64,000 nt of DNA from Iphione sp. A-MEVVRFRX5 (taxonomy: Eukaryota): positions 60,884,001-60,948,000 of the forward strand of contig OZ320318.1 in NCBI GenBank assembly GCA_976226885.1, read 5' to 3'. Below are positions 5,739 to 40,595 of the stretch, piece after piece. Position 1 is the stretch's first letter. Each line of letters starts with the position of its first letter. The notes under the pieces are model-generated. The model was not told where the DNA came from and did not search any database. It saw only the letters and a program-made list of their open reading frames with translations. The position numbers were made by a program, and so were the translations under genes.

Positions 5739-6019
5739 TAAATGGCAAATTTGATGCGAAAAGAGCTTCCAATCCTGTGCGTTTGTGCATGAAATTACCA
5801 AGCAGTGTTCGCTAATGAACAATCAAATAGCTGTAGCACACACTGCATGTGGAGGTCACCAAAGTTAAGCAACACTGAGTCCTAGTAGTACTTGGATGGG
5901 TGACTGACTGCCTAGTGGTTGGGGATGAAAATTACTGAATATGAGGCTAGTTTCTAAGTTACCGTCTCAATGCTTCCAGTGAGACCATGTGAGAGGGTCA
6001 GGATGCAAGTGCATTCTCA

Positions 6020-6879: not shown

Positions 6880-6938
6880 CTCAATACCAGTGGCAAAGGA
6901 AAGGATAAAGCAGACAAACCATGGCAGCAGATCCAATT
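6880..6938 (-). CDS. SLC26A11: SLC26A11 coding exon 14 (LDLLPWFVCFILSFATGIE)
   Basis: Acceptor ttttatccag, donor gtgagt, 59 nt. Confidence 0.9.
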
Positions 6939-12900: not shown

Positions 12901-14212
12901 CCAAACTAACATACCTGCATATACTGACACACTAATGAAGAGGCCATTTTCTATGCACTTCTCGAAATATGGAATCATCTGGGTGTATGTAGGTGAGGAT
13001 CTAAACATTTCGGGGTTTATTCCTCTAAAACGAAATGGAGGTACTTTTCCAGTATTAAATTTCTGAATAGATACTGTACATGTAAATATATTTCCGGTGA
13101 AGACACATAATTTCTTCCGTTTGTGCTGCCTTACCTGTGGTGAAGATCCATATGAACTTCTTGCAACATCTTAGACATCTCGTCATTTCACTGTCATTAC
13201 GCCATTTCATATTCTTGATTTTCTAGAAATATACAAGTTTATAACTTCTCCCAGTGTCGCCTTATTATTATACTGTCTTCTTTAGACTATGAAAGACTGT
13301 TCAAGTCTCTCAGGGCAGCTGTGCAATACAAATACATACAAATATTGTACTGTGTCATTATTATAAGCGACTTTTCACTATATTAAGTGTCCAATTTGAT
13401 TTTGTAAAGGTGAGGCAACTATTGATCCTACCTTCATCGTAAATAGGACTATCATACAAATGAGACCAAGCAGGAAATCCCAGAGACTGGAAAAAAGCAA
13501 TACACCTGCTAATTAATCTATGTTAAAGGAGTGACAATATGTAAAAGAGTACATGAAGCCTAATACCTACAATGTCCAGATGTAATACTAAGACAAATCC
13601 ACCATAAAGTGATGGTCTTGTGGTGTGTATAAATTTATCTGTACCACATGACACTGCACACACACCATAGGAAGGCCAAAAAAGTGATCCTCTTTGTTCT
13701 ATTAATTTTCCTGTAAATTCTTGGGAAGGATTTATACCGGTAAAAGAAGGAAAAACGTAAACTTGTACATATTTGCTGTAAAGTGTGCAGTACACACTGG
13801 AAATATATCTGGCCATCAGTTGGTGGTTTACATGCCTATGTGCGACGTAAAAATGGAACAAGCAAATGGCTGCATTGTACGTTACACGCGGAGGTCACAA
13901 TCACTCTCTGTTTGTCTNNNNNNNNNNNNNNNNNNNNNNNNNNNNNNNNNNNNNNNNNNNNNNNNNNNNNNNNNNNNNNNNNNNNNNNNNNNNNNNNNNN
14001 NNNNNNNNNNNNNNNNNNNNNNNNNNNNNNNNNNNNNNNNNNNNNNNCCCCAAACTCACCAAAAATAAGGTTTTTAACTCCTCAAACTCACCAAAACTCA
14101 GGTTCACTCCTCAATATCACTGCAACTCAGGTTATTACTCTTCAATCTGACTACAATTCAGGTTTTTCTCCTCAAACACATCACAACTCAGGTTTAACAT
14201 TCATATGAGGAG

Positions 14213-26200: not shown

Positions 26201-29200
26201 CTTGACGGGTCTTTTCTTTCTCATTGAATGTCATATGAACATATTCCCTGTCCCTTCCATCAGTTGCTATGTTGAAGCTGTCCTTCCTTAATTCCCTCAA
26301 CCCTTCCCTTCCCCGTCTCCCAAAGTGAACCATTACATTATAAAACACCTGTCTCTGCAGCCCTACTGGATCATCCTTGAACACCTTGGAATAGAGCTTG
26401 TCAATGTCCTCATCTTCTATCACAGACTTATGCTGAGTGTGATCATTGCCCGTTTTGCGAATTTTGGCTACATACCCTTTAAAGGCTAAATTGGCATTCT
26501 TGAAAATGGGGTCGCTCGTAATATTAAATGGTTTGGAAAATGGTGGGTCATTTAGATACCGCTGTAGACCAAAACGCAAATTTTTCACAGCACTCTTTGA
26601 ATACATTTCACCTTTCTTATTATTAACCACTGTATAATATTGTTCGAGGGTATCCGCCAACTGCTGCTGGGAGTAATCTTCAAATGCCGGGTCTTTGCCT
26701 ACTCCAATGAGCCACTCTGAAAAATCATGAAAGTGCTACTAAATAATTGTTTTACAGTGATTTAATTTCATTTCATCCCATCTCCCCCATGTCAGCTTTA
26801 TAATTTACTATGCGTTTCATACCTTTGAACTGCTTGACCGCCCAACGTGTCTGTTGTTTTGTTGCTTCTGCTGTCCTGTGTTCCTTCAATTCGTCCATTT
26901 CCTCCTTGCTTGGCACATGGAAGCGAACGTTTGGATGATTCAAGGGAGACTTCTGCTGCTCATCTATCAATGTTTCTTGAACTGCAATGAAATAATCCAC
27001 ACATACCTACACTATTTGCATTAATGTTCTATGCGCCTCCCCCACCCTACGGAAACTTACATGAAAATCATAGGTAATATGATTGAAATTAATTGGAAAC
27101 TGCATAGACATATACTCACTTTCTCCTTCTGAGAGGGAATCTTGGAATTCTGCTGCATCGAGATCCATTTCGAAGGCCTCCAAGAATTTCGATATTTGGT
27201 ATATTCCTGCGATGTACTCTTCTTTGGTTGCGGTGTTTTCGAGACGATATGCATCTAGTTCCACGTTGGGGTAACGGAATATTTCCTTAACTTTGCATAG
27301 TTTCTCTTGGAAAATCACAAAATCTCCCTCTTTAATCTTAGTTTCAGCCATTTCAGCCGTTTCATTCATTCGACGTTCTCTTGTCAAAAAGATCGTCTGC
27401 TCGACCTGTGTTTATAAAACGTAGGGTTCATTTCCGCTGTTTCGACCAATGAAATCAACTTCCCTTATAGTATTTCCTGTCACATGACTTTTCTTCTATT
27501 TGTTGACAAGAAGGCATTCTTCGACGGTGTTTGTTACATTTCTTAGGAAAATAACCACAATGTCCATTAATTATTTCAGTATAACGCTGTCAAATTTCCT
27601 AACAATAATTCAGGGTCACAAAACTTGTGAGATACATACAAAAGGCGTCAGATTTTCATGAAGCGAGTCGTCAAGGGTCCGCCATTTTATTTTACTTGAA
27701 ACCAATGGTATTGCTGCTTACAAATCGCTTCCCGGGAATGGTCCAGAATTCAAATCCAGCTGAGAACAATCGTTTCTAGGGGACAATGTACCGATTATCA
27801 CAACAGGAGTGTTAGAACGGAGGACAACTCGACACCATCAATACAATTTCGCCATGGACACACACAAACATTAATTAATCATTCCATCAAGCACCACCAC
27901 AATATCACCACATCTGCAATAACCCAGCACTCAGTAAGGAAGTTAACAGTTTCACCACTGATGCGACAGTAGATGTTTCTGCTCTTGCTTTTTGCCAGTT
28001 CGTTTCAAAGCAGGTCCCTGCTGATAAAAATAAATGGAACTGACCTGTACTTTGGAAGCCATTGTAGTATTGGTAGCTTCTTTTTAACATTAGCTAACGT
28101 ACATGTGTTGCGCATGCAGGCACGGCAGTTGAAACTCATGATGCGTTCTTTGACGTCATGGCATGCAGAGGTAACGTCTTTACAGCCCTGTTGTAAGCCT
28201 GGAGTGAAAAAAGAAATAATTAATTGTCTTCACATAAAAAAGAGATCAAAATACATTTAATCGGGGTGTCTAATGGGACTACTTCATTCCCTGGTGGAAC
28301 ATTATCCTCATACTAATGCTAAACTTCAACTTTCTTGTAAATTAAAAACGAATACTTAAAAACAATTTGTGCAGCAGCAAGCAATTTCTGACACTGGAAA
28401 AGTATAACAGTCGACACCCGCGTCGGCGACCACTTCGGGACTGTGTGAAAGCGGTCGCCCCAACAAGTGGTTGCCCCAGTTGTTCACCTCTCTTCTCCCT
28501 CTCACCAAAGTAACTTAGACAATCGTCATATGTGTTAAGAGTCCTAAAAATGCTGAATTTGACGGGTAAGAGTCAAAAGGTGCTGAATTCGACACGTTAA
28601 AGTCCCAAATGTGCTGAATTTGACAAGTAAGACTCCTTCTTACCCTTCTTACTGACAGATTACATGATACATCAAACGGTCAACATGGAAGTAAAATTTA
28701 TAGCTACATTTTTAGAAGCCCTCTTCTACTGCTTTAAAATATAACACGTGCAACATTTATAGCTACATATACATTAAGCCTTCTCATGTGCTACTATCCT
28801 TTGCAATTTACGAACGTGGACAAGCTTAAAACAATTCCTATGAAATTGAAAAGACTTTTATATTCTAGTATGAACAGTTGGTGAACAGTTTGTAAACCGT
28901 TCCTTAATGTACCAACATGCTCCTAAACGTGCAAATACATCTGTATGCGCTATGTACCGTGGCATGAACTCGTAAGTTCATTGTTGATATAAAGTTAATC
29001 AGTCATAATTCGCCTGGGTCATAAAACAACAAATGTTGTAAACATATAATGTCACTGTGTGTGATAATAATTCAGATGAATATTGACAAGAAGCAAACAA
29101 CTCCAACGAGACAAAAACGTCATTCATGGCTAGTTACATAAATACGATGTACACGTTTTTGGGGTGTGTTTACCCACCCTCAGCAGTTGAGCATGTCACG

Positions 29201-29647
29201 TGATAAAGCAACAAAGTTCGAGACAATGCGCGTTTTCTATTAAGAAGTTCGTAGAGAAATAATTTGTACATGACCTTTGCGCTCAAATAAAGTATTAAGT
29301 TCGTCTTTGCATTCGTGTTGTTAAAGCGAAGGACTCAGACACGACTGTACTTAAAACGTCAGAACGTTCACATTTATCTAGTTTCCCTGTTATCGGAGAC
29401 CCTTAGACGTTGCCAAGTATATGTGAACTATAGACAATTGAACGCTACAACTGGAGCAGACCAAGAACAGGGACAGATTTGGACAGATCAAACTGGGTTT
29501 TCTCGTATCCAAGGGCTCAGAGATGGGGACAGACATGAAATAGGGCCAGAAACGACCTTTTAAGCAGACTTGAATTTCACAGCTACCCAGAATTGAAATG
29601 GTGAATTCTTATTTTATTCAGCTACCTTGTACGCACGATTTCGCCAT
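6880..29647 (-). CDS. SLC26A11: Sodium-independent sulfate anion transporter (SLC26/SulP family), spliced and 3'-partial: join of 29647-29626, 28198-28045, 17856-17754, 17251-17059, 16877-16792, 15083-15004, 13486-13432, 13222-13135, 12211-12027, 9518-9446, 9256-9206, 8982-8922, 7616-7420, 6938-6880
   Basis: All 14 exons have AG/GT boundaries with matching phases and total 1407 nt (469 codons). The translation contains KKKLPILQWLPKY, GDLIAGLTVGLTVIPQGLAYA, YGLYSAFMGCFVYCLLGTSKDITLGPTAIMSL, YRIDANQELIAIG and YPVTGSFSRTAVNSQSGVRTPAGG, closely matching SLC26A11. The last TM segment and STAS exons were not found and presumably lie left of position 1. Confidence 0.95.
7420..7616 (-). CDS. SLC26A11: SLC26A11 coding exon 13 (TAVNSQSGVRTPAGGLWTG...KLWLIR-K)
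   Basis: Acceptor gtcaatag, donor gtgagt, 197 nt. Confidence 0.95.
8922..8982 (-). CDS. SLC26A11: SLC26A11 coding exon 12 (ASNLVGSFAASYPVTGSFS-R)
   Basis: Acceptor gctttacag, donor gtaatg, 61 nt. Confidence 0.95.
9206..9256 (-). CDS. SLC26A11: SLC26A11 coding exon 11 (RRNKYRIDANQELIAI-G)
   Basis: Acceptor atttcag, donor gtgagt, 51 nt; NQEL motif. Confidence 0.95.
9446..9518 (-). CDS. SLC26A11: SLC26A11 coding exon 10 (KIGGGLAVVPLMGVVESIAIGNAF-A)
   Basis: Acceptor ggtttcag, donor gtaaga, 73 nt. Confidence 0.95.
10450..11370 (-). mobile_element. 5'-truncated LINE RT remnant
   Basis: Minus-strand translation KNGVPQDFVLGPVLFTLYINN...EYAIYADDTII. A 23-bp tandem duplication (11372-11417) sits at the truncation junction. 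Confidence 0.8.
11789..11927. other. Assembly gap (others at ~13918-14047, 17547-17732, 57007-57151, 57240-57403)
   Basis: Runs of N; ends approximate. Confidence 0.95.
12027..12211 (-). CDS. SLC26A11: SLC26A11 coding exon 9 (RNAVVVLVASSLAG...GLPPFNLPPF...ALDMLA)
   Basis: Acceptor ctcttctag, donor gtgagt, 185 nt. Confidence 0.95.
13135..13222 (-). CDS. SLC26A11: SLC26A11 coding exon 8 (KIKNMKWRNDSEMTRCLRCCKKFIWIFTT-A)
   Basis: Acceptor atatttctag, donor gtaagg, 88 nt. Confidence 0.88.
13432..13486 (-). CDS. SLC26A11: SLC26A11 coding exon 7 (LWDFLLGLICMIVLFTMK)
   Basis: Acceptor ttttttccag, donor gtagga, 55 nt. Confidence 0.9.
14213..14295. repeat. (CT)n microsatellite
   Basis: Direct read. 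Confidence 0.95.
15004..15083 (-). CDS. SLC26A11: SLC26A11 coding exon 6 (KWLGLTVKSRAFIPQLYWTFANIEHT-N)
   Basis: Acceptor ctttgttcag, donor gtaagt, 80 nt, phase 0 to 2. Confidence 0.9.
16792..16877 (-). CDS. SLC26A11: SLC26A11 coding exon 5 (FIIDFIPYPVINSFTVAAAITIACGQIK)
   Basis: Acceptor catttttcag, donor gtgcgt, 86 nt. Confidence 0.95.
17059..17251 (-). CDS. SLC26A11: SLC26A11 coding exon 4 (YGLYSAFMG...MGIFSL-G)
   Basis: Acceptor gtctttcag, donor gtgaga, 193 nt; SLC26 signature region. Confidence 0.96.
17754..17856 (-). CDS. SLC26A11: SLC26A11 coding exon 3 (CPEFQGDLIAGLTVGLTVIPQGLAYAQVAELPPQ)
   Basis: Acceptor tttatttcag, donor gttggt, 103 nt, phase 2 to 0. Confidence 0.95.
19490..20110. 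repeat. ~67-bp minisatellite, 10 copies, with three-unit higher-order structure
   Basis: The gacctgatgactttg anchor recurs at 19500, 19567, 19633, 19708, 19775, 19841, 19908, 19976, 20043 and 20097. Confidence 0.92.
21100..21900 (+). mobile_element. Highly decayed LINE RT fragment
   Basis: GVPQGSVLEPIMFTLYI at about 21273-21325, preceded by a frameshifted RT domain 3-4-like sequence. Confidence 0.65.
22518..22645. repeat. Short tandem repeat (ggttctgc..tgagcac x4)
   Basis: Two ~70-bp units, each made of two subunits. Confidence 0.75.
23229..23848. mobile_element. PIF/Harbinger-like MITE
   Basis: TIR gccccggtttccttac / gtaaggaaaccgggcc (15/16), TGA 3-bp duplication, internal ~30-bp tandem repeats. 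Confidence 0.82.
25081..25197. repeat. 117-bp near-perfect palindrome (cruciform-capable) with a GGCC-GCA-GGCC core
   Basis: Left arm gtttaggcctaggctcta-actttttgtgcgataatccaagccc against the reverse complement of the right arm, gtttaagcctaggctctatactttttgtgcgataatccaagccc: 1 mismatch and 1 indel. Inner stem gcaccc/gggtgc surrounds gaggccgcaggccga. Confidence 0.95.
25433..25459 (-). terminator. Two AATAAA polyadenylation signals of the recombinase gene
   Basis: Plus-strand tttatt at 25454-25459 and 25433-25438, 60-90 nt after the stop codon. Confidence 0.55.
25521..27369 (-). CDS. Crypton-type (DUF3504/KCTD1-ZMYM-like) tyrosine recombinase, three exons, 534 aa: join of 27369-27120, 26981-26823, 26716-25521
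   Basis: Exon 1 (250 nt) ends A|gtgagt. Exon 2 runs tttcattgcag|...AAA G|gtatga (159 nt). Exon 3 starts ttttcag|AG TGG (1196 nt to the stop). The junction restores TRWAVKQFK-E-WL. Catalytic motifs are intact: HFGRRGREGLREL (R), EKEKT (K), YTNHCIRST (HxxR), VTGHKN (H), SLAPY (Y). There are no internal stops or frameshifts. Confidence 0.92.
27411..27450 (-). promoter_or_regulatory. Candidate core promoter of the recombinase gene
   Basis: TATAAA on the minus strand at 27416-27411, about 42 nt upstream of ATG 27369; CCAAT/ATTGG box at 27446-27450. Confidence 0.55.
28045..28198 (-). CDS. SLC26A11: SLC26A11 coding exon 2 (..LQQGCKDVTSACHDVKERIMSFNCRACMRNTCTLANVKKKLPILQWLPKYR)
   Basis: Acceptor ttttttcactccag, donor gtcagt, 154 nt, phase 1 to 2; carries the family motif LPILxWLPxY. 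Confidence 0.92.
28535..28640. repeat. Three ~32-bp tandem units next to a pogo-like TIR fragment
   Basis: tgctgaatt(t/c)gac x3; cagtcgacacccgcgtcggcgaccac near 28408. Confidence 0.55.
29195..29204. promoter_or_regulatory. CLEAR-like E-box (GTCACGTGAT) in SLC26A11 intron 1
   Basis: Matches 9/10 of GTCACGTGAC; related CACGTGAC at 31299-31306 and CACGTGAT at 31943-31950. Confidence 0.4.
29626..29647 (-). CDS. SLC26A11: SLC26A11 coding exon 1 (MAKSCVQ-G)
   Basis: Kozak accATGG; 22 nt ending in G|gtagct (phase 1), in frame with the open phase-1 exon at 28198. Confidence 0.7.
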
Positions 29648-32600
29648 GGTAAACGGTTTCTCTCGCGCCTCGTGAAAAGATGGAGCACCAGCTCGAACCC
29701 AGATTGAGAGAGTAGCGGTCAGGTGAAGGACATCGACCCGCCTTCCAGCTTATCCAGCCCAAGTCGATGGTTGATCCTTAATATATCTCTGATCTGTACG
29801 CATCGTGTGTCCCATTTGAAAATATCGATGGAAAGGACTGGTGACTTTTACTGGGTATCCAGATAAAACAATATTTTCCTTCCAGTGGAGCCGGTAAAGG
29901 ATAGCAGCTGTTTACAGTTTAGGGTAGGCTGTATTGTGGATTTGTCACGTTCCTCTTATGAGTACAGGTTTCCTTCTCATAAAATGGCACTCCAGTTCCT
30001 TACGTCAGCTTAAATGTTGCCTTTCAGGCTATCTGTGAGTTTTTGAACCTTCCTTCGTGATAACACAGGAATGAAATATGCATTACTACCGACAGCTGGA
30101 GTGGGAGCTTGTTTTCGCTGTCCTCTGTGCTGATCGTACACAGATTACTGAATAACACGTCATTCTTGCCTTTGCATGTGGTGTTTGAAATTCTAGTTTC
30201 CTGCAAGTGTGTGGATGCCTTCAACTTGTTTGCAGGCCCGGGTCCCGGTGAAGGGCCTTGGTATGCTGGCCATCAGCACTGTCGCCATTTCAGCGGCAGG
30301 TCTGCACCAGCGAGCAATCGAAAGCAGCCAGCCAGCGAGCCTCGCGCACAGCGGTGCTACTTCTAGCGGGGACAGTTGATGCTGCTCCTGCAGCGCGGGT
30401 CTCCGCTCCGGCTGTGCTGTTTACATCATCGCCTCAGGGCCTGAAAGCCTACCGGTCACTCAGAGCGACTGCTGGTCACAGACCGTGTACAATAATGTAT
30501 ACATGTTGCGGCTATCCGCCCCCGCCCCCTCCTCTCGCACACCAAGGTACACACACCAAAGGAAAGCTAAAAATACAATTAAAAGACTGTAATCTTAGAA
30601 ACATGTCAGTTTTAGGCGAAAATGTGTCACTCAGCAGAAATAACCTCTGCAAAGACACAATCCCTATCGATTGCCTGAGGACAACTGGCAGTGTGTAAAT
30701 CAGGATAGTCCCACTGAAATAACTCAGATTAACTACAGTCCGGCGATCAGCCGACTATGCAGACAGTGGTGACATTTCGTCGTACATCGCTTTGCTCGTA
30801 TTCACTGCACGTACGAACACATTTTCTTTAAAGCTGCCTTACAAGAAATATCGTACTAGGGGTCTAATCTTAATGGCAGCTGTCAAGGGAATTTATTACA
30901 GCAGAAGCGCATGGATCATGTGCACGCTGTGTACGTAAGAAGCATGATACTGCTGGAGTAACGACAAACATAAATTTGTAAGATGTACGGCTGAAGAAAA
31001 CTGCTACTAGTTCCAAAATATTAAAATAAAGATGTGTCATTGTGATAAACATGTCGATATAACGGAGTTCGTCGTAACGATGCCTAAATGTATAACCTTG
31101 ACTACCGATGCTGAGCAGTGTTATTATTAGGGAGAAATTCCTTCCATTTCAGATGTCTACTTGCTAAGTAACTGGGAAAGAAGTCTGACAGCTCGAAATC
31201 TAAGCTTGAGGCAAATCAGCATCGGTTACGTATCCTGACTATGAGGTTACTGATAAAGATGACATTTTAAAAAAGTACAGAACATATGTACGGTATCACA
31301 CGTGACGCCCTAGGCAGCTCAATGCTAAAAACAAGCACTTCTGATGCTTTCAGTTTTATTTTTGCCATAAAAATATCTACCTATATATATGTACACATAC
31401 ACATATTTATACATGTATATAATTGCAATCCCTAGCAAATCGCCGCATAACGGACTCAATTTACATCTCCTGGACCAGGAAATGTAGAACTGAGGTAAAG
31501 AAATCGAACAGATGCCAGACGATACGTTACCTTTTCCTCTCCGTCAACTAGCGTCCTGTGTTGGGTGTTGAGAGGAAGAAAGCCTCCTCTTTTAAGGGAA
31601 ATTTCAGAGGATCGTCTTTAGACGATCAAATGGATATATCAAAGTAGGCGTCGGCAATCCGATCTCAACCGGAGAGGTCATTGTTATGAGGAACCGCCCC
31701 CACATGTCGAGCAACTCATGGTATTATGCTTGTAGGAAGGGAGCTACTCTTTCTAATCACCTGTGGCGATATCTCAGGTGACCACCTGGTGCTCAACCTA
31801 GAAACTTGAGTATAGACTGACTCTGTAACATGTGATAACGTGTGATAAGAAACCCGCGGTTCCCATAGTGACATTCTAATAAAATGTGTATAAAATGTGA
31901 AAACCAGTAGATAAATGTCTGGGATATTTCATGACTAGAACACACGTGATCTTCTCATGCTCTTTGCTTCCCACGGAGACACGTGGAAATTTCGGTAGGG
32001 TAGGGGGTGGCGGGTGATCTCTTCTTCACCACAATTATCTCATTACTGAAATGTCCATACTTCATATTATCTCCTTTCATTATGAGAGACAAATGTACCT
32101 CTATTATGTATGTTAAAATGTTAAATGTATGTTAATTTTTTTTAAAGCCGCCCTTGGCCACTTCAACAATAAAATATTATTCCACTCAAACCAACCTAAA
32201 AATCAGTGTTACAGAAATCATCCACATATGAGTCACCCTTCTAAATTTAAATCCTCGCTAGTCTCGTGCCACATTTAACAATACAACATGTGGGCGGGGA
32301 TGGCCTCAGACAACCCCCAGACTCTTCCTTGGGCGAGAATGATGATCATAACAGGATATTATATTTGTCTACTACTTATAACAATATTAGTACTGTCTGT
32401 CCCGTGATAACAGGGGGGGTCAGCTATTTTGGTGAAGCGTTATTGGGTGTTTTAATTCTTCGTGAAACGTTATTTGCCCTCCTAAATAGAGGTGAAACGT
32501 TACTGGGCAATTAATGGTGATACGTTATCAAGGAAACAATTCTTGGTGAAACGATATCTGCTCTTTTTTTAAGCGTTACAGGTGATTTGAATTGTTGGTG

Positions 32601-33727
32601 AAGCGTTATTAGGTATGCCCTGACTCCCCCTGTGTGATACCGCCAATGAATGAAAGAAATTTCCCTCATCCTCATCCCCACCATTCTGGAATGCTGGATG
32701 GCACGTGACCTCATCAACGTGGGCTTGATCAACGCATAATAGTTCTTTTTAATCTGGAAACGTAGCTAGGACAGAGGAAGAAAGAAGAGCGGTGTTAGTG
32801 AAGGTGGAAAGTGCTAATTATGTCATCATAACAAGTATGCGTGAAACATGAACAATTTACATTGATCACCGACTAACTTTACACACTTGCCTGAATTTTT
32901 TTAAGGGGTTGAAATATTTCAGACCAATTTAAACCCACCTAAGAACATCTTCAACTAGATGTGAACCCTGCCAAGCATAAATTATCACCCAGTTGCGTGT
33001 GTCGAAGCACTATATCACATAACAAGGTAACAGAAAAGTTGACGCTTCAGCAGAAGCTGAACCTAATACTACAGAACAGAACTGGATGTTCATGTAGACA
33101 AAGGCTGCAGCAAAGTAAGTGGACTCCTCAAAATGTAAGTTAAGATCTTACCAGATGAGAATTACCACACCACCACTGAAGCAAAAGCTCATCGGATTAC
33201 ACCAGACATAAATTAAAGACGGCTGATCTGGAGTTCTTCACAAAATTTAGGCCACTAGGTTATGCTGCTTGTCTATTTAGGGCCTCCATCGTGAGCCCTC
33301 GTGATAGCCAGTGACATTGGTCTGACTGACCTTTAGTCATCACAGGCTGGGTCACTAAGTTTAGACAGCGACCAGTTGACACTTGCGGGCTTTTTACCAA
33401 GTATTATTGGGAATTTCTATCCGTTTCAGGAGTTATTCTTTTAATAATTCCTGTGCCCAATAAATGCTATAAGACAAAAGAGGTTCGGGATAGAAAATAT
33501 TCCTGCAGCAAACTATGGCTTGCAGGGACTAAATGTTTATGGAGGTAAATCAACCAAGAAGCATATGACTGCCTACCGATGTAAACACGAAGAGGCAACC
33601 TCAAGAGCCTTTACTTACAGAGCAGTATAATCAGCACGTGAATCTCTCAGACTAAGTTCTGCGGAACCCTCTATTTCAAGCAGTCTCAGTGGCATTTAAA
33701 TCTACACGCATGTATATATATAAACTA

Positions 33728-34288
33728 CAGGAGAACCCCACCATGCGACCAGCCGCTTGGGGCAACCAGTCGCCCATGGCGACCACTTTTGCTCAGAACG
33801 GATGGAATTTTAATACATTTCCTACATGATTTACTTCGCCTATGGCGACCACTTGGCTTGGGCGACCATTCGCCCATTAAGACCACTATTTTCAGTACCA
33901 AAGTCATGATTTCAAGGTGTCTAGTGTGACCACTGGCCCCTATATCCAAGAAACACTACGAAAACAACACATGAGGGATGCCTGTCGCACTTCTTTGAGG
34001 GTAACCGGGGTGACCACTAGCCCCTATACCCAAGATACACTACGAAAACAACCCCTGAGGGACTCCTGTCGCGCTTCTTTGAGGGTAACTGGGGTGACCA
34101 CTACCCCCGATACCCAAGAAACACTACGAAAACAACCCTTGAGGGACTCCTGTCATGCTTCTTTGAGGGGGAGACAGAGAGAGGGAAATAGAGAGAGAGG
34201 GAGACACCCAATGCCTTAGGCGACCAGTTGCCTAATGCGACCACTTCAGCTCAGTCCCTTAGGTGGTCGTATTAGGCGGGTTCTCCTG
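33728..34288. mobile_element. Tc1/mariner-pogo-like MITE with internal 84-bp tandem repeats
   Basis: TA|caggagaaccc...gggttctcctg|TA; three 84-bp units starting at 33926, 34010 and 34094. Confidence 0.8.
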
Positions 34289-34545
34289 TACCTGGGCCAT
34301 GACATTCTGCAGGAAAGAGTTTGTAACACAGAACCAAATAAACATCTCACTTAATCAAGAAAGTACTGAGAAAGGGAGTTCTTTTTACAGTGTACAGATA
34401 TAAGTCTATAAGCACTGTCTAGGTGAGATAACTGCTGTGCGATGTTGCTGAGTGGTGCCACTGAAAGTCTGGGCACCGACAGTCTTAGCCAGAGCAGACA
34501 CCCATAAACTATGTATGGCTGAAATGTGGGCATGATAAAAAGATA

Positions 34546-34722
34546 AAGTCAAGACCCTATTTACAACCACATTGATTTATGACTGTATCTAATTTATGAC
34601 CATTTAAGATGGGAACAAAACTCATGGTTGCTATAGGAATTGTGATCAATTTATGACCAAATTTGCCAATACAACCTGTTCAGCTTGATCCAAAGAGGTG
34701 GTCATAAATAGAGTTTCGACTG
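34546..34722. mobile_element. Older copy of the 51637 pogo-like MITE family
   Basis: aagtcaagaccctatttacaaccac...gtggtcataaatagagtttcgactg|ta. Confidence 0.7.
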
Positions 34723-35750
34723 TACATCACAATGGAGATCTCAGGAGCTACTAGGAAAGGTGTTGACAGTAAACACCTGGAAAAGACATGTATCATGAAA
34801 GGGTGCTAGGCTAGGACCAGGGGTTAATTTGAAAATTGGCTAGTCATGACCCAGGTTATGCACCTAAGTCAGAGTTTATGTTCCCTATGACCTAAGGCTA
34901 CAACAGGTTACAAACTATGTACCTAAGGTTGTGAACTGTGACATGGAGGTTGCAAACCCAACATAAGGGTCATGAACTTTTGCTACATAATGTCCTTGAT
35001 TTTTCTTGACTTTTCAGAGGACTCCTTCATGCCACCTGTATGTGTCGACTCTGCTGAAATAAAGATCAGCCAACTTGGAAACCTGTGTCGTCTTGAGTTG
35101 TGTTACAAGCTATAGTGTAGCCTGTAGGTTATTTATAGCTGACACCAGCCATCCACACTTGTGACAATGCCTCCGCCTAAAGTATAAACCTAAGATGTTT
35201 TAATAAAAGTATATCTAATACGATGAGAAGCACACAATTTAATCATTTTAAATTTGTTTGTGTGGAAGTTATAACTACAAACGTTGACAGGATGTCAGCA
35301 CAAATACCATGCAGTAATCTAAAGTAGATGGCATCTGAAAGTGGTCGGGTGGACAGGACTTGTGACTCTGCCTCCAACTAAAGTATGAATAAGTTTAATA
35401 AAAGCATATCTCATATGATGAGAACCCCACAATTTAACCATTTTGCAATTGTTTGTGTGGAAATGACACAGGAGTCCAAGAAGAAAGGCATACGACAGGT
35501 AGGAACATGGCAGTCAGCAAAGACACATATCTACGGCTGCACGTGTGTGAAGATTTATGTTTAATTTCATGAACACATTGTAATTTTACACAAATGGTAC
35601 TTGAGTGTTTTAGGTAGTAGTCAGTGCAGAGTGTCACTCAAATGTCGAGGCAGCCTGAAGCTGGGTCACCTCCCACTGCACCCTCTCAAATGAGGAATGG
35701 TCAATAGAAAGAGTAGAAACAATCGTTTACAACTGCAAGTTCATAATTAC

Positions 35751-35752
<2 letters not shown>

Positions 35753-35782
<30 letters not shown>
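35753..35782. repeat. (AT)n microsatellite
   Basis: Direct read. Confidence 0.9.
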
Positions 35783-35784
<2 letters not shown>

Positions 35785-35923
35785 GTCATGCATCTAAACT
35801 CTATGTTTAGTACCCGTGTATTAATATAGCTGGTCAAGAATGGCGAGCAAACAGGGCTCAGGTACCTGCATACCACAGACTGAGAACTAACCTGAAAATT
35901 TTCAATTCCAATTTCAACAGTTA

Positions 35924-36575
35924 GGCCGGCTTTCCATGTATCCGGAGAATTTTACGCACAGCGTAGTTCATGCGGAAATTCGGCCGATTTCCGCACCCCT
36001 ACGCACAGGTGCTTTCCATGTGTGCGTGCGTGCGTGCATGCATGCGTGCGTGTGTGCATGCATGCCATTATCTCAGACAACAGAGAGAGGGGTATCAGTT
36101 GAAATTGTGAAGTTTTTTTTGTGAATATTGAAGCATATTTGTGGAAATTGTGCAGTTTTTCATGGAGTTTGAAGCATATCGGTGGAAATTGTGCGTTTTT
36201 TCATGGAGTTTGAAGCATATCGGTGGAAATTGTGCAGTTTTTCATGGAGTTTGAAGCATATCAGTGGAAATTGTGCAGTTTTTATCCAAATGATATGCAA
36301 ATTAGAAAATAATTCACAACATCTATCAAGTGATAGACAATGTCTATCATGCTGAAAAGGCTCATCTCTCTATTCTACTTGCCTCTGTAGGCATCCGTGC
36401 TATGGAATCCGGAGAAATTTACGGCCCAGGTTCGTTTTTCACCTCCGGACCCGGACTATGGACCCACGGACCCGGATGCATGGAAACAATCATGTAAAAC
36501 ATCATAGAATCGTTTTTTTCCGGACCTACGTATGCGTGGTCCGGAAAGTATTTCCGTGTGCATGGAAAGCCAGCC
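35924..36575. mobile_element. PIF/Harbinger-like MITE
   Basis: TIR ggccggctttccatg / catggaaagccagcc (14/15), TTA target duplication on both sides, internal 41-bp tandem repeats. Confidence 0.85.
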
Positions 36576-36784
36576 TTAATCACCTTTATAGGAGATTTTT
36601 ACATGATGCTAAAGATAAATTAAAGAAAAACATTATATATATATATTAACTCCAAGCAACATCATGCCCACTTTGGTAACCACTTAGCAGTCTGGTTGAA
36701 CATCTCTCTCAAATGGAGGGACTGATATGGGGGGAATTATGGCACCCACCCTCCAGTGTCTTCTACCAACTAAAATGTTACTTT

Positions 36785-37096
36785 ACGCACAAGATATACC
36801 ATATTTAATTTTAAAGCACGGCAGCCATCTTTTTTCTTCTTTGAGCCTATATGACGAACCGTGGGTGTATTTCACATAATGCACGGGACCATGGGGTCCT
36901 GTCACGCATCCCCAAACTGTGAATACACTCGTTATGCACCTATGACGCACAGCGTGGTTGGGGATGATTGGGTTTGGCAATTCAGGTGGTAGTGGCCGAT
37001 TTTACATAGCCTCTGCCGCTTGGGGAATCGAACCCACTTCATACACATGACTCTCAGCTTGCTCAGCACCTTAACCCACTGGGCCACAGAGACCCC
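36785..37096 (-). mobile_element. tRNA-derived SINE
   Basis: The minus strand starts ggggtctctgTGGCCCAGTGGgttaagg (A box)...GGGTTCGATTCCC (B box), followed by a ~230-bp non-tRNA body; no complete cloverleaf or acceptor stem. Confidence 0.75.
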
Positions 37097-37109
37097 AGCA
37101 TAAGAGAGG

Positions 37110-38070
37110 GACAGAGACCTGTCTGTTACCTGTTGTGTGTCCCCTCTAATCTTCTGTAGCGGTGTCTGTTGGATGTTGTGTGTCCCCTGTAATGCTCTGT
37201 AGAGGTGTCTGTTACCTATTGTGTGTCCCCTGTAATGCTCTGTAGAGGTGTCTGTTACCTATTGTGTGTCCCCTGTAATGCTCTGTAGAGGTGTCTGTGA
37301 CCTGTTTTGTGGCCCCTGTAATGCTCTGTAGAGGTGTCTGTTGAATGTTTTGTGTCCCCTCTAATCTTCTGTAGTGGTGTCTGTTGGATGTTGTTTGTCC
37401 CCTGTAATGCTCTGTAGAGTTGTCTGTGACCTGTTGTGTGTTTCCTGTAATGCTCTGTAGAGGTGTCTGTTGGATGTTGTTTGTCCCCTGTAATGCTCTG
37501 TAGAGTTGTCTGTGACCTGTTGTGTGTTTCCTGTAATGCTCTGTAGAGGTGTCTGTTGGATGTTGTGCATCCCCTGTAATGCTCTGTAGAGGTGTCTGTT
37601 GGCTGTTGTGTGTTCTCTGTAATGCTTTGTAGAGGTGTCTGTGACCTGTTATGTGTCTCCTGTAATGCTCTGGAGAGATGTCTGGTACCGGTTGTGTGTC
37701 CCCTGTAATGCTCTGTAGAGGTGTCTGTTGAATGTTTTGTGTCCCCTGTAACATTCTGTAGTGGTGTCTGTTGGATGTTGTGTGTCCCCTGTAATGCTCT
37801 GTAGAGCTGTTTGTGACTTGTTGTGTGTTTCCTGTAATGCTCTGTAGTGGTGTCTGTTGGATGTTGTGTATCCCCTGTAATGCTCTGTAGAGGCATCTGT
37901 TGGATGTTGTATGTCCCCTGTAACTCTCTAAAGAGGCACATGTTACCTGCTGTGTGTCCCCTGTAATGCTCTGTAGAGGTGTCTGTTACCTGTTGTGAGT
38001 CCCCTGCAATGCTCTGTAGAGGTGTCTGTGACCTGTTGTGTGTTTCCTGTAATGCTCTGTATAGGTGTCT
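37110..38070. repeat. 43-bp minisatellite, about 22 copies
   Basis: Unit cccctgtaatgctctgtagaggtgtctgttggatgttgtgtgt (starts at 37141, 37184...). It produces the repetitive minus-strand ORFs with a 43-aa period. Confidence 0.95.
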
Positions 38071-38116
38071 GGGCATCAAGGGAAGGGGGCTTGGCGTCAG
38101 GGGAGGGGGCCTTGCT

Positions 38117-38260
38117 TTAAGTGAGATACATAAGCTCGTGTGTGGCTGTTTGCGAAATAAACCCATGGGTCATTCGCCCACTCGGCTGCGCCTCGTGGGC
38201 TACTGACCCGTGGGTTTATTTCGCATACAGCCACACACTCGTTATGTATCTATCACTTAA
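38117..38260. mobile_element. 144-bp TTAA-bounded palindromic (foldback) element
   Basis: Arms ttaagtga..gatacataa..gtgtgtggctgt.tgcgaaataaaccca.gggtca and their reverse complement. The core on the minus strand reads gcccac-gaggcgcagccga-gtgggc. Confidence 0.8.
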
Positions 38261-38929
38261 CCACTGACGCCTGAAGAAACATTTGATTGAAACCATAGGA
38301 TTCTAATGACAATACATGTACATGTATATCATTGTCAAACTGGATATCACATGATATCCTGCATGAAATCACAAAGAACTGCTCGTGTATTCCTTCCTTC
38401 GACCGTTAATAATAGGCAAGGCTGACATTACAATTTTTTAGAGCTTTCGTAGTTTTTTAAAAGAATAGTTTATTTGAAGACAGAAGACACACATCAAAGA
38501 TGTGCACACATGCTCGCAGAACACAGGTATGGGTTATGGCGTTGAGATCCAATTTCAATGTACTGGATTCAGGTCAATGTTTCAGTGCGGCCTTCTGTCT
38601 ACTGATACTGTTGCTATCAACAGAAGTATTTCTGACTAGACGAATCCATAGACATGGGAAAACAAGAATGACTGCAGCGCACACAGCAAGTAGAGGTCAA
38701 ACGCCCCAGCCACCCTTCTGCTGACCTGCTGACTAAGCAGGGGGGTGGGGAGTGGCTGGGAGTGAACCTGACAGCCCCGCCACCTGGTGGCACTGGTGAG
38801 CTTTGGTTGGAAGCACCATCCCACCCTCCCCCCTGGCCTGGTGCACCAACTAAGAATGCAAGGCCAGGGTATAGAGCTGTCAATCATCTCAAAGCACCCA
38901 GTTGAGAGTTTTCTTCTACCTTTCTCTTA

Positions 38930-39090
38930 CACAGAGGTGATGTAACACACTTACATGTTTACTCAGACTTGCTCTGACTTCAAAGAGTTAGCTCTACCCA
39001 CTTTCTCATCTGCACTACCCCTTGCATTAAGTGGAGGTCATATCATCCACAACACTGATCAGCACTATAAGCAGATATGACCTCTACTGA
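38930..39090. repeat. Dispersed hairpin repeat (homologous to 6290-6440)
   Basis: gatgtaacacactt...gcattaagtggaggtcatat...atatgacctctactga. Confidence 0.7.
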
Positions 39091-40441
39091 ACATTGAACT
39101 TGTCCCATTTTTCATGGCCACATGCGAGTATATCAGGCCAGAAATACAATGAAAGAGGCATGAAATGTATGGCCAATGTAAGGACTATGTATGAACACGG
39201 TATGAGTTAGTCTGACTTTTTTGGAGACAATTGTATTTTTAAAAAAAGGACCATTTATAAGTTCTTCTAGTTTTCCAAGACATTTCGTAAAGGCACAGTT
39301 TACACAAATACTACTTGTTTTTACACTTCATACACATATGCATTTGTCATTCTGTTCACAGAAAGACTATTTTCCTAGGCCACATTTTCATGTATACACA
39401 GTCTTCATGGCTGTCATTCAGAATGTGTGGATACGGACACTCCCAGACTAGGGAACGTGATGATCTTTCCATGTAGACATATTCCATATTATAGACAGAG
39501 CAATCCTTGCGTGCAACCTTGATAACTGAAATAACCATATTATGCTTCCATTGTATGCATTTGTATCCAGGAAAAACAATGGTTGGCTGACCACCACAGG
39601 GGGGGGGGGGGCGTATCACCTTCGCTATGTTCAGACACATGAGTAGGGGCCTATAGTGACTGTCTATGTCTGGTTTTTCGTGCATGTCCCGAAGTATAAT
39701 GTTCAACAGAAATGTATACTCTACTCACTGGGCAATTTCTTGCTGAGGAAATGGTGTGTGCTAATAATACACTTTGCGGTATCTTTTATGAAGAGTCCAC
39801 ACAGGAACAACGGCAACTGAATCATCCATGTAAGCAAATCAGAAATTATCGTACACCGCATCCCTAGTACTTAATGCTTCGAAGTGAGTAAATCTAAACT
39901 CGAGTAAAAGTACGATTCGTTTCCGGCCGGCATGGATGGCTGAGTAATTAGGACGTGGTGACACACTTACAGTCCCCTCCCGAAAATAAACAGAAACATT
40001 ATTTAGTAGGTCCTTTTAAATCTGGTGTATAAATGAGGGGGGTGAAGTGATATTACAGTGAATATTTCAACTATACCAGAATCTCGTCCTCCTCCCAGAA
40101 GATCAATATATTTTTATGTTAGCAGTAAATATTTTGGCTGATCCTCAATCATTCTTTACTACAAGTGATATTACTCGCACTGGCACTGACTACGTACTTC
40201 ATACCCGTACTATAACTCTCATAATGCTGGCGGCGAACCCTGATAAAGGTAACGGGGCTATCAAAAACATTAAATGATGCATCGATCAATGAATGGTACT
40301 TACGCAACATTAAAATGCGTGTTAACAGTCAGTTACAAGATGACATTCATGCTTAATTTTCAGTACCTATTATGTAGCTGTTAACGAGGATAAATGTACA
40401 ACCCTACCTCACAGCTCTCGTCCGTGCTAATCATGAGTTCA

Positions 40442-40493
40442 ACCGGAAGTGCTCTTGTGAAAAGAGCAGACGAAATAACTGGGGTCTTCCGGT
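40442..40493. promoter_or_regulatory. SGSH proximal promoter with two oppositely oriented ETS/GABP-type sites
   Basis: accggaagtg (40442-40451) and cttccggt (40486-40493), 10-60 bp upstream of the SGSH ATG. Confidence 0.6.
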
Positions 40494-40501
40494 GAAGCGA
40501 G

Positions 40502-40595
40502 ATGAGATCGTTGGTGCTGCCAATAGTGTATTTTACAGCTTATTTGTTCGTAACACAGGGGAAAGAGAATGTTAAAAACGTGCTACTATTTGTGG
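40502..40595 (+). CDS. SGSH: SGSH exon 1 (signal peptide + KNVLLFV-A)
   Basis: ATG at 40502, donor G|gtaagt, 94 nt, phase 1. Confidence 0.9.

What the first reader, a model, noticed from the sequence alone, without database searches (positions are those of the whole stretch)
29647..40502. SLC26A11-SGSH head-to-head pair retained in an apparent invertebrate
Seen: the two genes diverge, with start codons 10.9 kb apart and no other recognisable host gene between them. Established: human SGSH and SLC26A11 are head-to-head neighbours on 17q25.3; SGSH releases sulfate from heparan sulfate in lysosomes and SLC26A11 is a lysosomal sulfate transporter. Inference: an ancient functional enzyme-plus-exporter pair kept together despite heavy transposon invasion, suggesting shared regulation.
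Basis: partly seen in the sequence, partly recalled or inferred. Interest (0 to 1): 0.7.

Follow-up and report, generated by a model that had tools for sequence, protein, structure and literature searches.

The report
Ancient SGSH–SLC26A11 divergent gene pair
A worm-like invertebrate keeps the gene for a lysosomal enzyme that frees sulfate (SGSH) back-to-back with the gene for the lysosomal sulfate exporter (SLC26A11), as humans do; identifier evidence puts the two side by side in several molluscs and close together in an acorn worm, so the pairing looks very old, but shared control is not shown.

Summary
An SLC26A11 orthologue lies on the minus strand. Its exons run from 29647/28198 down past the left end of the window. 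An intact seven-exon SGSH orthologue of 563 codons starts at 40502 on the plus strand and ends about 17.7 kb beyond the right end. Both genes are single-copy in this 1.18-Gb genome.

The genome is a lophotrochozoan outside Mollusca, probably an annelid, and not a vertebrate.

The 10.9 kb between the start codons holds no recognisable gene. It holds short dispersed repeats and a minisatellite.

Consecutive locus tags or accessions place the two genes side by side in Patella caerulea, Patella vulgata and Solemya velum. They place them within a few identifiers in Babylonia and the hemichordate Ptychodera. In Owenia the listed copies are on different chromosomes, and in several other species they are far apart. 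I found no paper describing the pair outside vertebrates.

"Shared regulation" stays untested. No RNA run was listed. The two 5' ends sit in separate CpG-rich zones, not one bidirectional promoter. A cluster of TCACGTG E-boxes, the MiT/TFE type, lies on the SLC26A11 side and is a testable candidate for a shared control element.

The scan has not reported this pair on other DNA.

The parts
29626..29647 (-). Putative first coding exon of the SLC26A11 orthologue (MAKSCVQ + first base of Gly)
   Evidence: accATGG context and GT donor. Its phase 1 end fits the exon 2 acceptor. The N-terminus resembles Ptychodera MAKAIREG. No RNA evidence.
28045..28198 (-). SLC26A11 exon 2 (N-terminal cytoplasmic part ending ...KKKLPILQWLPKY)
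   Evidence: tblastn to Patella, Nucella and Glandiceps proteins. AG/GT boundaries.
17754..17856 (-). SLC26A11 exon 3 (CPEFQGDLIAGLTVGLTVIPQGLAYAQVAELPPQ)
   Evidence: Pfam PF00916 positions 1-33. tblastn 60-78% identity. Boundaries.
17057..17251 (-). SLC26A11 exon 4
   Evidence: PF00916, E 4e-15. The best solved structure is human SLC26A11 9iar at 70.5 bits, against 34 bits or less for prestin, A6, A2 and pendrin.
16792..16878 (-). SLC26A11 exon 5
   Evidence: tblastn 62-72% identity.
15003..15089 (-). SLC26A11 exon 6 (weak match)
   Evidence: tblastn 41% identity, E 0.1-0.2. Approximate.
12054..12239 (-). SLC26A11 middle exon
   Evidence: tblastn, E 6e-10 to the Nucella protein.
9438..9524 (-). 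SLC26A11 exon (GGGLAVVPLMGVVESIAIGNAF)
   Evidence: tblastn 59-61% identity.
9204..9257 (-). SLC26A11 exon (YRIDANQELIAIG)
   Evidence: tblastn 67-72% identity.
8933..8983 (-). SLC26A11 exon (GASNLVGSFAASYPVTG)
   Evidence: tblastn. Weak on its own, but collinear with the other exons.
7421..7621 (-). SLC26A11 exon (RTAVNSQSGVRTPAGGL...). The remaining exons, including STAS, lie left of the window
   Evidence: PF00916. 9iar scores 66.2 bits; the best other animal SLC26 scores 27.8 and a plant SULTR 39.7. The STAS Pfam hit is on L030:5588-5743:-.
29648..40501 (.). Spacer between the two start codons, with no recognisable gene
   Evidence: No Pfam family above cut-off in the ten longest ORFs. Tandem repeats. 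Dispersed repeats at 32402-32642, 33703-34294, 36800-38263 and 38812-39100.
29197..33640 (.). Cluster of CACGTG E-boxes, five of them with a T/A flank (MiT/TFE-type, CLEAR-like). It spans SLC26A11 intron 1 and the nearby spacer
   Evidence: TCACGTG: 6 hits in 29000-34000 against 0.53 expected, and 0 of 400 first-order Markov simulations reached 6. Window-wide: 9 against 4.4 expected. The region was chosen after seeing the hits.
39500..40500 (.). CpG-rich zone directly upstream of the SGSH start codon
   Evidence: CpG observed/expected is 0.72-0.90 here against 0.46 for the window. CpG-poor DNA (0.04-0.4) at 34-35.5 kb and 37-39.3 kb separates it from the SLC26A11-side zone at 27-31.7 kb.
40502..40595 (+). 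SGSH exon 1: start codon, signal peptide, NVLLFV
   Evidence: Sequence and GTAAGT donor. Joins in phase to exon 2 to give NVLLFVADDAGFE, as in mollusc SGSH NVLVLIGDDAGFE.
52311..52443 (+). SGSH exon 2 with the metal-binding DD and the catalytic CSPSR motif
   Evidence: Human SGSH 4mhx residues 28-74, E 2.5e-12. The next sulfatase scores E 0.003. Boundaries.
54439..54572 (+). SGSH exon 3 ([27 protein letters not shown]...)
   Evidence: tblastn 73-79% identity to Patella, Nucella and Solemya SGSH. Boundaries.
55409..55559 (+). SGSH exon 4 ([17 protein letters not shown]...). Exons 5-7 lie beyond the window at L037:5055-5293, 5638-5813 and 6917-7678
   Evidence: 4mhx residues 116-169, E 2.9e-20, the only structure matched. 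The later exons match 4mhx at E 4.7e-44, 1.5e-22 and 4.1e-59.
25081..27369 (-). Crypton-type element inside SLC26A11 intron 2
   Evidence: 379-aa ORF at 25521-26660. Lies between exon 2 (28045) and exon 3 (17856). Identified by earlier notes s1-334820 and s1-334863; not re-analysed here.
41107..42757 (+). Reverse-transcriptase-like ORFs (LINE-type) inside SGSH intron 1
   Evidence: ORF translations. Not scanned against Pfam here.

Best explanation
**Shown.**
- The window holds the 5' halves of two single-copy orthologues in divergent (head-to-head) orientation.
- One is SLC26A11, the lysosomal proton:sulfate/chloride exchanger, on the minus strand.
- The other is SGSH, the heparan N-sulfatase, on the plus strand. 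It is intact, with 7 exons and 563 codons.
- The genome is a lophotrochozoan, probably an annelid.

**Shown indirectly.**
- The neighbourhood is inherited from the bilaterian ancestor. The two genes carry consecutive identifiers in Patella caerulea, Patella vulgata and Solemya velum.
- They carry near-consecutive identifiers in Babylonia and in the hemichordate Ptychodera.
- They are neighbours in vertebrates.

**Inferred, at about 0.3 on its own.**
- The pair has been kept because both genes belong to the lysosomal gene programme and draw on common regulatory DNA in the spacer.
- In this genome that DNA is not one bidirectional promoter. Each gene has its own CpG-rich 5' zone.
- An E-box cluster of the MiT/TFE (TFEB-type) kind on the SLC26A11 side may serve both genes.
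- Splitting the pair would uncouple sulfate release from sulfate export.
For: **Identity of the genes.**
- Pfam Sulfate_transp and STAS on the minus-strand exons.
- Human SLC26A11 (9iar) is the best solved match by a factor of two in bits over every other animal SLC26.
- The nearest named proteins are 'sodium-independent sulfate anion transporter'.
- The trees place the window protein in the SLC26A11 clade. That clade is separated, at 100% support, from this genome's four other SLC26 genes.
- SGSH exons match human SGSH 4mhx over residues 28-502 at E 1e-12 to 1e-59. Other sulfatases score at or near noise.
- All SGSH splice sites are GT-AG with consistent phases, giving 1689 nt.
- Both genes are single-copy.

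**Linkage elsewhere.**
- Patella caerulea: SNE40_019537 and SNE40_019538.
- Patella vulgata: XP_050390169-70 and XP_050390171.
- Solemya velum: ScPMuIL_003652 and ScPMuIL_003653.
- Ptychodera flava: XP_070580306 and XP_070580310-11.
- Babylonia areolata: XP_076444410-25 and XP_076444451-75.
- In each of these five species both genes lie on contigs of identical length.
- Lottia: both genes on one 4.19-Mb scaffold.
- Vertebrates.

**Function.**
- PMC13408680 identifies SLC26A11 as the candidate lysosomal sulfate exporter and notes its upregulation during lysosomal biogenesis.
- PMC12448385 reports Sgsh and Slc26a11 rising together in mineralisation models and high in macrophages.

**Regulatory hint.**
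- E-box cluster.
Against: - No RNA evidence exists for transcription starts, for SLC26A11 exon 1, or for co-expression.
- The start codons are 10.9 kb apart. CpG-poor repeat DNA separates two CpG-rich zones, which argues against a shared core promoter.
- No CACGTG lies within 5 kb upstream of the SGSH start.
- The E-box region was picked after seeing the hits, and other bHLH-ZIP factors such as USF and MYC/MAX bind the same core.
- Adjacency in other species rests on the order of identifiers, not on coordinates, and their orientation is unknown.
- The listed copies are on different chromosomes in Owenia. They are far apart by identifier in Gigantopelta, Mya, Glandiceps and Pinctada.
- Slowly rearranging genomes keep many neighbour pairs without any functional reason.
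Confidence: 0.55

Rival explanations
1. Neutral inertia. The two genes are true orthologues and ancestral neighbours. They are still adjacent here, and in some other slowly rearranging genomes, only because no breakpoint has yet fallen between them. No shared regulation or selection keeps them together.
For: - The listed copies are separated in Owenia, on different chromosomes.
- They are far apart by identifier in Gigantopelta (difference 847), Mya (about 3000), Glandiceps (359) and Pinctada.
- The spacer has grown to 10.9 kb with repeats.
- Each gene has its own CpG-rich 5' zone.
- Hundreds of ancient neighbour pairs are known in such genomes (Irimia et al. 2012, PMC3514665; title and abstract only).
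Against: - Adjacency survives in at least three deep branches: a lophotrochozoan outside Mollusca, two mollusc classes, and a hemichordate and vertebrates.
- This particular pair has a direct biochemical link between product and exporter.
- Several species have lineage-specific SLC26A11 duplicates, and only the best 120 hits were listed. Some apparent separations may therefore be the wrong paralogue.
Confidence: 0.35
2. The 5' ends are mis-assigned. SLC26A11 starts at the methionine inside exon 2 (MSFNCRAC...) or at an undetected exon. Or an unrecognised short-exon or non-coding gene lies in the spacer, so the two genes are not immediate neighbours.
For: - Exon 1 is only 22 coding bases with a weak donor (gtagct). 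A phase match has a one-in-three chance.
- Some orthologues have short N-termini that would fit a start in exon 2.
- No RNA run was available.
- Only ORFs of 60 aa or more were screened.
Against: - Similarity to hemichordate and mollusc proteins extends upstream of that methionine, and exon 2 has no earlier in-frame ATG.
- Even without exon 1 the orientation and neighbourhood stand. The gap becomes 12.3 kb.
- No Pfam family scored above cut-off in the spacer.
Confidence: 0.07
3. The transporter is not the SLC26A11 orthologue but another SLC26 paralogue, so the resemblance to the human pair is coincidental.
For: - The gene model is incomplete. Two expected exons were not found, possibly under the masked stretches 11789-11926 and 13918-14047.
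- No named vertebrate SLC26A1-A9 sequences were in the trees.
Against: - Against solved structures, human SLC26A11 scores 70.5 and 66.2 bits. Prestin, SLC26A6, SLC26A2, pendrin and SLC26A3 score 34 bits or less.
- The trees place the protein inside a clade that follows the species tree and contains bird, shark and lungfish SLC26A11. That clade is 100% separated from this genome's other SLC26 genes.
Confidence: 0.03

Closest known systems
Human SGSH / SLC26A11 divergent pair at 17q25.3 (also linked in gar and teleosts)
   Same: - The same two orthologues are in the same head-to-head arrangement.
- In human, the published deletion of SGSH exons 2-8 and the SLC26A11-RNF213 duplication place SGSH exon 1 on the SLC26A11 side.
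- Fish keep slc26a11 and sgsh in one conserved segment.
   Different: - From my own knowledge, unverified here, the human 5' ends are within about a kilobase or overlap.
- Here the start codons are 10.9 kb apart, with repeats and two separate CpG-rich zones between them.
- The SGSH gene has 7 exons here against 8 in human, and spans about 41 kb.
Conserved bidirectional (head-to-head) gene pairs such as GALNS/TRAPPC2L
   Same: - Divergent orientation.
- One partner is a lysosomal sulfatase.
- Such pairs are said to be evolutionarily conserved for functional reasons (PMC8895820).
   Different: - The definition there requires 5' ends within 1 kb and a shared promoter.
- This locus fails the distance criterion, and no shared promoter is shown.
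- That review does not list SGSH/SLC26A11.
Ancient metazoan microsyntenic pairs kept by cis-regulatory constraint (Irimia et al. 2012, PMC3514665)
   Same: A neighbour pair retained across protostomes and deuterostomes. One proposed cause is regulatory DNA that cannot be separated from its target.
   Different: - Those blocks typically pair a developmental regulator with a bystander gene that holds its enhancers.
- Here both partners are housekeeping lysosomal genes of one pathway.
- I could not check whether this pair is in that paper's lists, because no supplement was held.
CLEAR network / TFEB regulation of lysosomal genes (Sardiello 2009, cited in PMC13408680)
   Same: - SLC26A11 is reported as upregulated during lysosomal biogenesis.
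- The window has a cluster of TCACGTG-type E-boxes near its 5' end.
   Different: - No site matches the full 10-base CLEAR consensus.
- Binding by an MiT/TFE factor in this animal is untested.
- The SGSH-proximal 5 kb has no such site.

Membership tests
SLC26A11 orthology group (SLC26/SulP family) | Sulfate_transp (PF00916) transmembrane domain | tested here: met
   Exon-wise Pfam hits over the cut-off at 17748-17846, 17051-17254 and 7418-7624. E 4e-15 for exon 4.
SLC26A11 orthology group (SLC26/SulP family) | C-terminal STAS domain | tested here: met
   PF01740, E 4e-7, 30.1 bits against a cut-off of 22.6. The hit is on L030:5588-5743:-, about 14.3 kb left of the window and collinear with the other exons.
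SLC26A11 orthology group (SLC26/SulP family) | Closer to SLC26A11 than to any other SLC26 paralogue, and placed inside the A11 clade | tested here: met
   9iar scores 70.5 and 66.2 bits against 34 or less for other animal SLC26 structures. Trees. Named vertebrate A1-A9 sequences were not in the trees.
SLC26A11 orthology group (SLC26/SulP family) | Complete, uninterrupted coding sequence | tested here: inconclusive
   13 collinear coding segments were found, plus the putative exon 1 and a weak match at 13491-13432. About two expected exons are missing. They may lie under the masked stretches 11789-11926 and 13918-14047, which I did not fill.
SLC26A11 orthology group (SLC26/SulP family) | Lysosomal localisation and proton-coupled sulfate/chloride exchange | not testable with these tools
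   Known for the human protein (PMC13408680) and for lysosome and symbiosome localisation in cnidarians (bioRxiv 2025.10.09.679812).
SGSH (N-sulfoglucosamine sulfohydrolase, type I sulfatase) | Sulfatase domain with the C-x-P-x-R formylglycine motif and metal/active-site residues (DD, GKKH, HDPH, SDNG) | tested here: met
   ADDAGFE...SSCSPSR, IIGKKH, FHDPHRCGH and TSDNGIPFPSGRTN, each aligned to 4mhx. PF00884 hit on exon 6.
SGSH (N-sulfoglucosamine sulfohydrolase, type I sulfatase) | SGSH-specific C-terminal domain (PF16347) and best match to SGSH rather than other sulfatases | tested here: met
   PF16347, E 1e-10. 4mhx scores 203 bits against 32.5 for the next sulfatase. Exons 4 and 5 matched SGSH only.
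SGSH (N-sulfoglucosamine sulfohydrolase, type I sulfatase) | Intact open reading frame with signal peptide | tested here: met
   Seven exons, all GT-AG, phases consistent, 1689 nt ending in TGA. The hydrophobic N-terminus reads [20 protein letters not shown]. No signal-peptide predictor was run.
Bidirectional-promoter gene pair | Opposite strands with 5' ends within about 1 kb, sharing one promoter | tested here: not met
   The start codons are 10,855 bases apart. Two separate CpG-rich zones are divided by CpG-poor repeats. Transcription starts are unknown.
Ancient conserved microsyntenic pair | The same two orthologues are adjacent in distant phyla | tested here: met
   Consecutive identifiers in Patella caerulea, Patella vulgata and Solemya velum. 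Near-consecutive identifiers in Babylonia and Ptychodera. Vertebrates. The evidence is indirect: identifier order, not coordinates. Orientation was not tested.

The most novel reading that the evidence does not exclude
SGSH and SLC26A11 form a two-gene lysosomal sulfate module that has been held together since the bilaterian ancestor. A shared MiT/TFE (TFEB-type) E-box enhancer cluster in the spacer holds it together, so that sulfate release from heparan sulfate and sulfate export from the lysosome are switched on together. The spacer can grow and fill with repeats, but it cannot be broken.
Probability: 0.2. Interest if true: 0.65.

Novelty: new member of a known kind. Interest (0 to 1): 0.5.

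Why it matters
SLC26A11 was proposed as the long-sought lysosomal sulfate exporter only in 2026 (PMC13408680). That paper does not mention its neighbour SGSH.

If an enzyme that frees sulfate in the lysosome has stayed next to this transporter in worms, limpets, a protobranch clam, an acorn worm and vertebrates, that is independent evolutionary support for the transporter's role.

It also gives a simple case for asking whether gene neighbourhoods in animals can be preserved by pathway co-regulation. The usual explanation is a developmental enhancer that cannot be separated from its target.

There is a practical point for Sanfilippo A (SGSH) work. Deletions or regulatory variants at the shared 5' region could affect both genes.

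Tried and rejected
I could not read neighbours, distances or orientation in other genomes and fell back on identifier order.
- **The look-up of sequencing runs** listed no run. Read laying was therefore not used, and there is no expression or transcription-start evidence.
- **Species identification** by exact look-up of six intronless ORFs of this genome found nothing. The species is unidentified.
- **Pfam on the genome.** The genome-wide PF00884 scan matched none of the seven SGSH exons. The SGSH_C (PF16347) scan later matched exon 7, beyond the window. I found the window exons by motif and confirmed them against 4mhx.
- **Literature.** Searches for the pair with microsynteny, bidirectional or head-to-head terms gave nothing relevant. 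The supplements of Davila Lopez 2010 hold neither gene name. The Irimia 2012 supplements are not held. Zimmermann 2019 is not held.
- **Full CLEAR palindrome.** TCACGTGA occurs once in the window, which is not more than chance. Only the 7-base form clusters.
- **Second SLC26A11-like gene.** The multi-exon SLC26 gene on C4 is closer to the other paralogue group.
- **Failed scripts.** Two shuffle scripts timed out. A lighter Markov control replaced them.
- **Joined models.** Joined spliced models were never sent to a search tool. They were used only in local scripts for the trees, with X at each junction.
- **Masked stretches.** The N stretches were not filled.
Full report
**Where the window is and what kind of genome it is.** The window is G000:C13:60884001-60948000 of a 1.18-Gb assembly in 89 contigs. 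GC content is about 40% and CpG observed/expected is 0.46. The genes are intron-rich. The nearest named relatives of both genes come from molluscs, an annelid, a brachiopod and hemichordates, not vertebrates. In the SLC26A11 tree the window protein sits in the lophotrochozoan group. It falls outside the well-supported bivalve-plus-gastropod clade, in a polytomy with Owenia (annelid, highest identity at 55%) and Lingula. The SGSH tree is poorly resolved but also places it loosely among lophotrochozoans. Other agents' notes on this genome call it an annelid. My trees are compatible with that but do not prove it. Exact look-ups of intronless ORFs found no annotated copy of this genome, and no sequencing run was listed, so the species stays unidentified. 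The "vertebrate" refutation does not apply.

**The transporter gene.** Pfam Sulfate_transp hits lie on the minus strand at 7418-7624, 17051-17254 and 17748-17846. A whole-library search with exon 4 returned full-length proteins. Their sources name them "sodium-independent sulfate anion transporter", which is SLC26A11, in Patella, Glandiceps, Strongylocentrotus and a bird. tblastn with these proteins maps collinear coding segments:
- 28198-28045
- 17856-17754
- 17251-17057
- 16878-16792
- 15089-15003
- 12239-12054
- 9524-9438
- 9257-9204
- 8983-8933
- 7621-7421
- left of the window, at about -735, -13.1 kb and -14.3 kb

The segment at -14.3 kb gives a Pfam STAS hit. The gene therefore spans at least 44 kb. 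About two expected exons were not found. The masked stretches 11789-11926 and 13918-14047 lie where those exons are expected, and I left them as they are.

Against solved structures, two exons score 70.5 and 66.2 bits to human SLC26A11 (9iar). They score 34 bits or less to prestin, SLC26A6, SLC26A2, pendrin and SLC26A3. In the trees the protein lies inside a clade that follows the species tree: lophotrochozoans, ambulacrarians, vertebrates, insects. That clade is separated, at 100% support, from the four other SLC26 genes of this genome that were included in the trees. The multi-exon SLC26 gene on C4 also belongs with that other group. Only one SLC26A11-type gene was found in the genome. The paralogue refutation is therefore not met, with one caveat: named vertebrate A1-A9 sequences were not in the trees.

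**The 5' end of the transporter.** Exon 2 (28198-28045) has no in-frame ATG before the internal MSFNC, yet similarity to hemichordate and mollusc proteins extends upstream of that methionine. It encodes MAKSCVQ plus one base before a GT donor, and it joins in phase to the exon 2 acceptor. The resulting N-terminus is within the length range of orthologues and resembles Ptychodera's MAKAIREG. This is plausible but unproven. A phase match alone has a one-in-three chance.

**The sulfatase gene.** The genome-wide Pfam Sulfatase scan missed every SGSH exon. I found the exons by motif and open-frame listing and by the SGSH_C scan, and confirmed six of the seven against human SGSH 4mhx. Exon 3 was not run against 4mhx. 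It rests on 73-79% tblastn identity to mollusc SGSH and on the sequence itself.

| Exon | Position | 4mhx residues | E-value |
|---|---|---|---|
| 2 | window | 28-74 | 2.5e-12 |
| 4 | window | 116-169 | 2.9e-20 |
| 5 | beyond the window (L037) | 162-251 | 4.7e-44 |
| 6 | beyond the window (L037) | 247-309 | 1.5e-22 |
| 7 | beyond the window (L037) | 306-502 | 4.1e-59 |

Other sulfatases score at or near noise in the same searches. Exact boundaries, in window coordinates with the last three exons beyond the window end, are:
- 40502-40595
- 52311-52443
- 54439-54572
- 55409-55559
- 79055-79293
- 79638-79813
- 80917-81678, followed by TGA

All splice sites are GT-AG and all phases are consistent, giving 1689 nt or 563 codons. 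Exon 1 encodes a hydrophobic signal-like N-terminus and NVLLFV. It joins to give NVLLFVADDAGFE, matching NVLVLIGDDAGFE in molluscs. The catalytic CSPSR motif and the DD, GKKH, HDPH and SDNG motifs are all present. The gene is single-copy. It carries an insertion of about 48 residues relative to human, between residues 353 and 359.

**The spacer.** From 29648 to 40501, the ten longest ORFs give no Pfam family above the cut-off. There is a 43-bp minisatellite at 37120-38071 and smaller arrays. Dispersed repeats were detected at 32402-32642, 33703-34294, 36800-38263 and 38812-39100. Some copies of the 32402-32642 element are up to 99% identical. The 36800-38263 element carries the minisatellite and the palindrome noted earlier. 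Together these make at least 2.6 of 10.9 kb. That figure is a lower bound, because only 40 candidates are scored per search. Larger mobile elements sit in the introns: a Crypton in SLC26A11 intron 2, and reverse-transcriptase ORFs in SGSH introns 1 and 4.

CpG observed/expected is 0.6-1.07 from 27 to 31.7 kb and 0.72-0.90 from 39.5 to 40.5 kb. It is 0.04-0.4 at 34-35.5 kb and 37-39.3 kb. The two 5' ends thus look like two separate unmethylated zones, not one bidirectional promoter.

| Species | SLC26A11 (or -like) | SGSH | Contig evidence | Reading |
|---|---|---|---|---|
| Patella caerulea | SNE40_019537 (KAK6171323) | SNE40_019538 (KAK6171324) | one 35.1-Mb contig | consecutive |
| Patella vulgata | XP_050390169-70 | XP_050390171 | one contig | consecutive |
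| Solemya velum | ScPMuIL_003653 | ScPMuIL_003652 | one contig | consecutive |
| Ptychodera flava | XP_070580310-11 | XP_070580306 | one contig | near-consecutive |
| Babylonia areolata | XP_076444451-75 | XP_076444410-25 | one contig | near-consecutive |
| Lottia gigantea | LOTGIDRAFT_212898 | LOTGIDRAFT_230682 | one 4.19-Mb scaffold | close |
| Glandiceps talaboti | XP_077980013 | XP_077979654 | same contig | identifiers differ by 359 |
| Gigantopelta aegis | XP_041362514 | XP_041363361 | same contig | identifiers differ by 847 |
| Mya arenaria | XP_052766005-45 | XP_052762938 | same contig | identifiers differ by about 3000 |
| Pinctada imbricata | FSP39_019726 | FSP39_001551 | same contig | tags far apart |
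| Owenia fusiformis | listed copy | listed copy | different chromosomes | separated |
| Nucella lapillus | ACOMHN_065735 | ACOMHN_050034 | different contigs | separated, or a split assembly |
| Lingula anatina | listed copy | listed copy | different scaffolds | separated, or a split assembly |

Several lineages have their own SLC26A11 duplicates, and only 120 hits were listed per search. Apparent separations may therefore involve the wrong copy. With vertebrates, the simplest reading is that the two genes were neighbours in the bilaterian ancestor and have since separated in some lines. Orientation outside this genome and human was not tested.

**Function and regulation.** PMC13408680 shows human SLC26A11 to be a proton:sulfate/chloride exchanger. 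It proposes the protein as the lysosomal sulfate exporter, notes its upregulation during lysosomal biogenesis, and notes that sulfate efflux prevents product inhibition of sulfatases. It does not mention SGSH. A cnidarian study finds SLC26A11 on lysosomes and symbiosomes. A mouse and human study reports Sgsh and Slc26a11 rising together. No paper I could search describes the pair as a conserved unit.

In the window, CACGTG E-boxes are concentrated between 28.7 and 35.5 kb, with 8 of the 12 in the window. The T-flanked form favoured by MiT/TFE factors occurs 6 times in 29-34 kb against 0.53 expected, and 0 of 400 simulations reached 6. None lies in the 5 kb upstream of SGSH. The region was chosen after seeing the hits, and other factors bind the same core. 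It is a lead, not a finding.

**Verdict.** The reading "ancient enzyme-plus-exporter pair" is supported by indirect but consistent evidence. "Shared regulation" remains a hypothesis that the 10.9-kb spacing and the two CpG zones neither prove nor exclude. This is a new, functionally suggestive example of a known kind of thing, conserved microsynteny of a divergent pair, and not a new kind of system.

Noticed in passing
G000:C10:37744194-37745468, C15:56277139-56278461, C15:76610662-76611999, C4:38230065-38231393 (L009-L012): Four full-length SLC26 genes have uninterrupted open frames of 758-827 aa, with no introns across the whole Sulfate_transp domain. The SLC26A11 gene, by contrast, has about 16 exons. 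In the trees the four form their own clade. They may be retrogene-derived expansions.
   Followed up: partly
G000:C10:12.70-12.82 Mb (L021-L028, L031-L034): A dense tandem cluster holds at least eight sulfatase genes. Sulfatase N-terminal and SGSH_C-like exon hits repeat within 120 kb.
   Followed up: no
The first look found thousands of candidate copies genome-wide, at 75-87% identity.
   Followed up: partly
window 32402-32642: A short interspersed element of about 225 bp has copies that are 98-99% identical elsewhere (C2, C15, C17), so it has been active recently.
   Followed up: no
window 11789-11926, 13918-14047, 17547-17732, 57007-57152, 57240-57403: These are masked or gap stretches. The first two lie where SLC26A11 exons are expected but were not found. 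The third abuts exon 3.
   Followed up: no
L037:7070-7220 (window about 81070-81220): The SGSH last exon carries an in-frame insertion of about 48 residues (KPAPNKLQLQSN...ARETGGSG) relative to human SGSH residues 353-359. Lengths vary here in other invertebrates too. It could be a surface loop or an unrecognised short intron.
   Followed up: no
window 59259-60125 and 41107-42757: Reverse-transcriptase-like ORFs, probably LINE fragments, lie in SGSH introns 4 and 1. Duplicated flanking segments at about 58.9-59.2 kb and 60.3-60.6 kb have near-identical translations.
   Followed up: no
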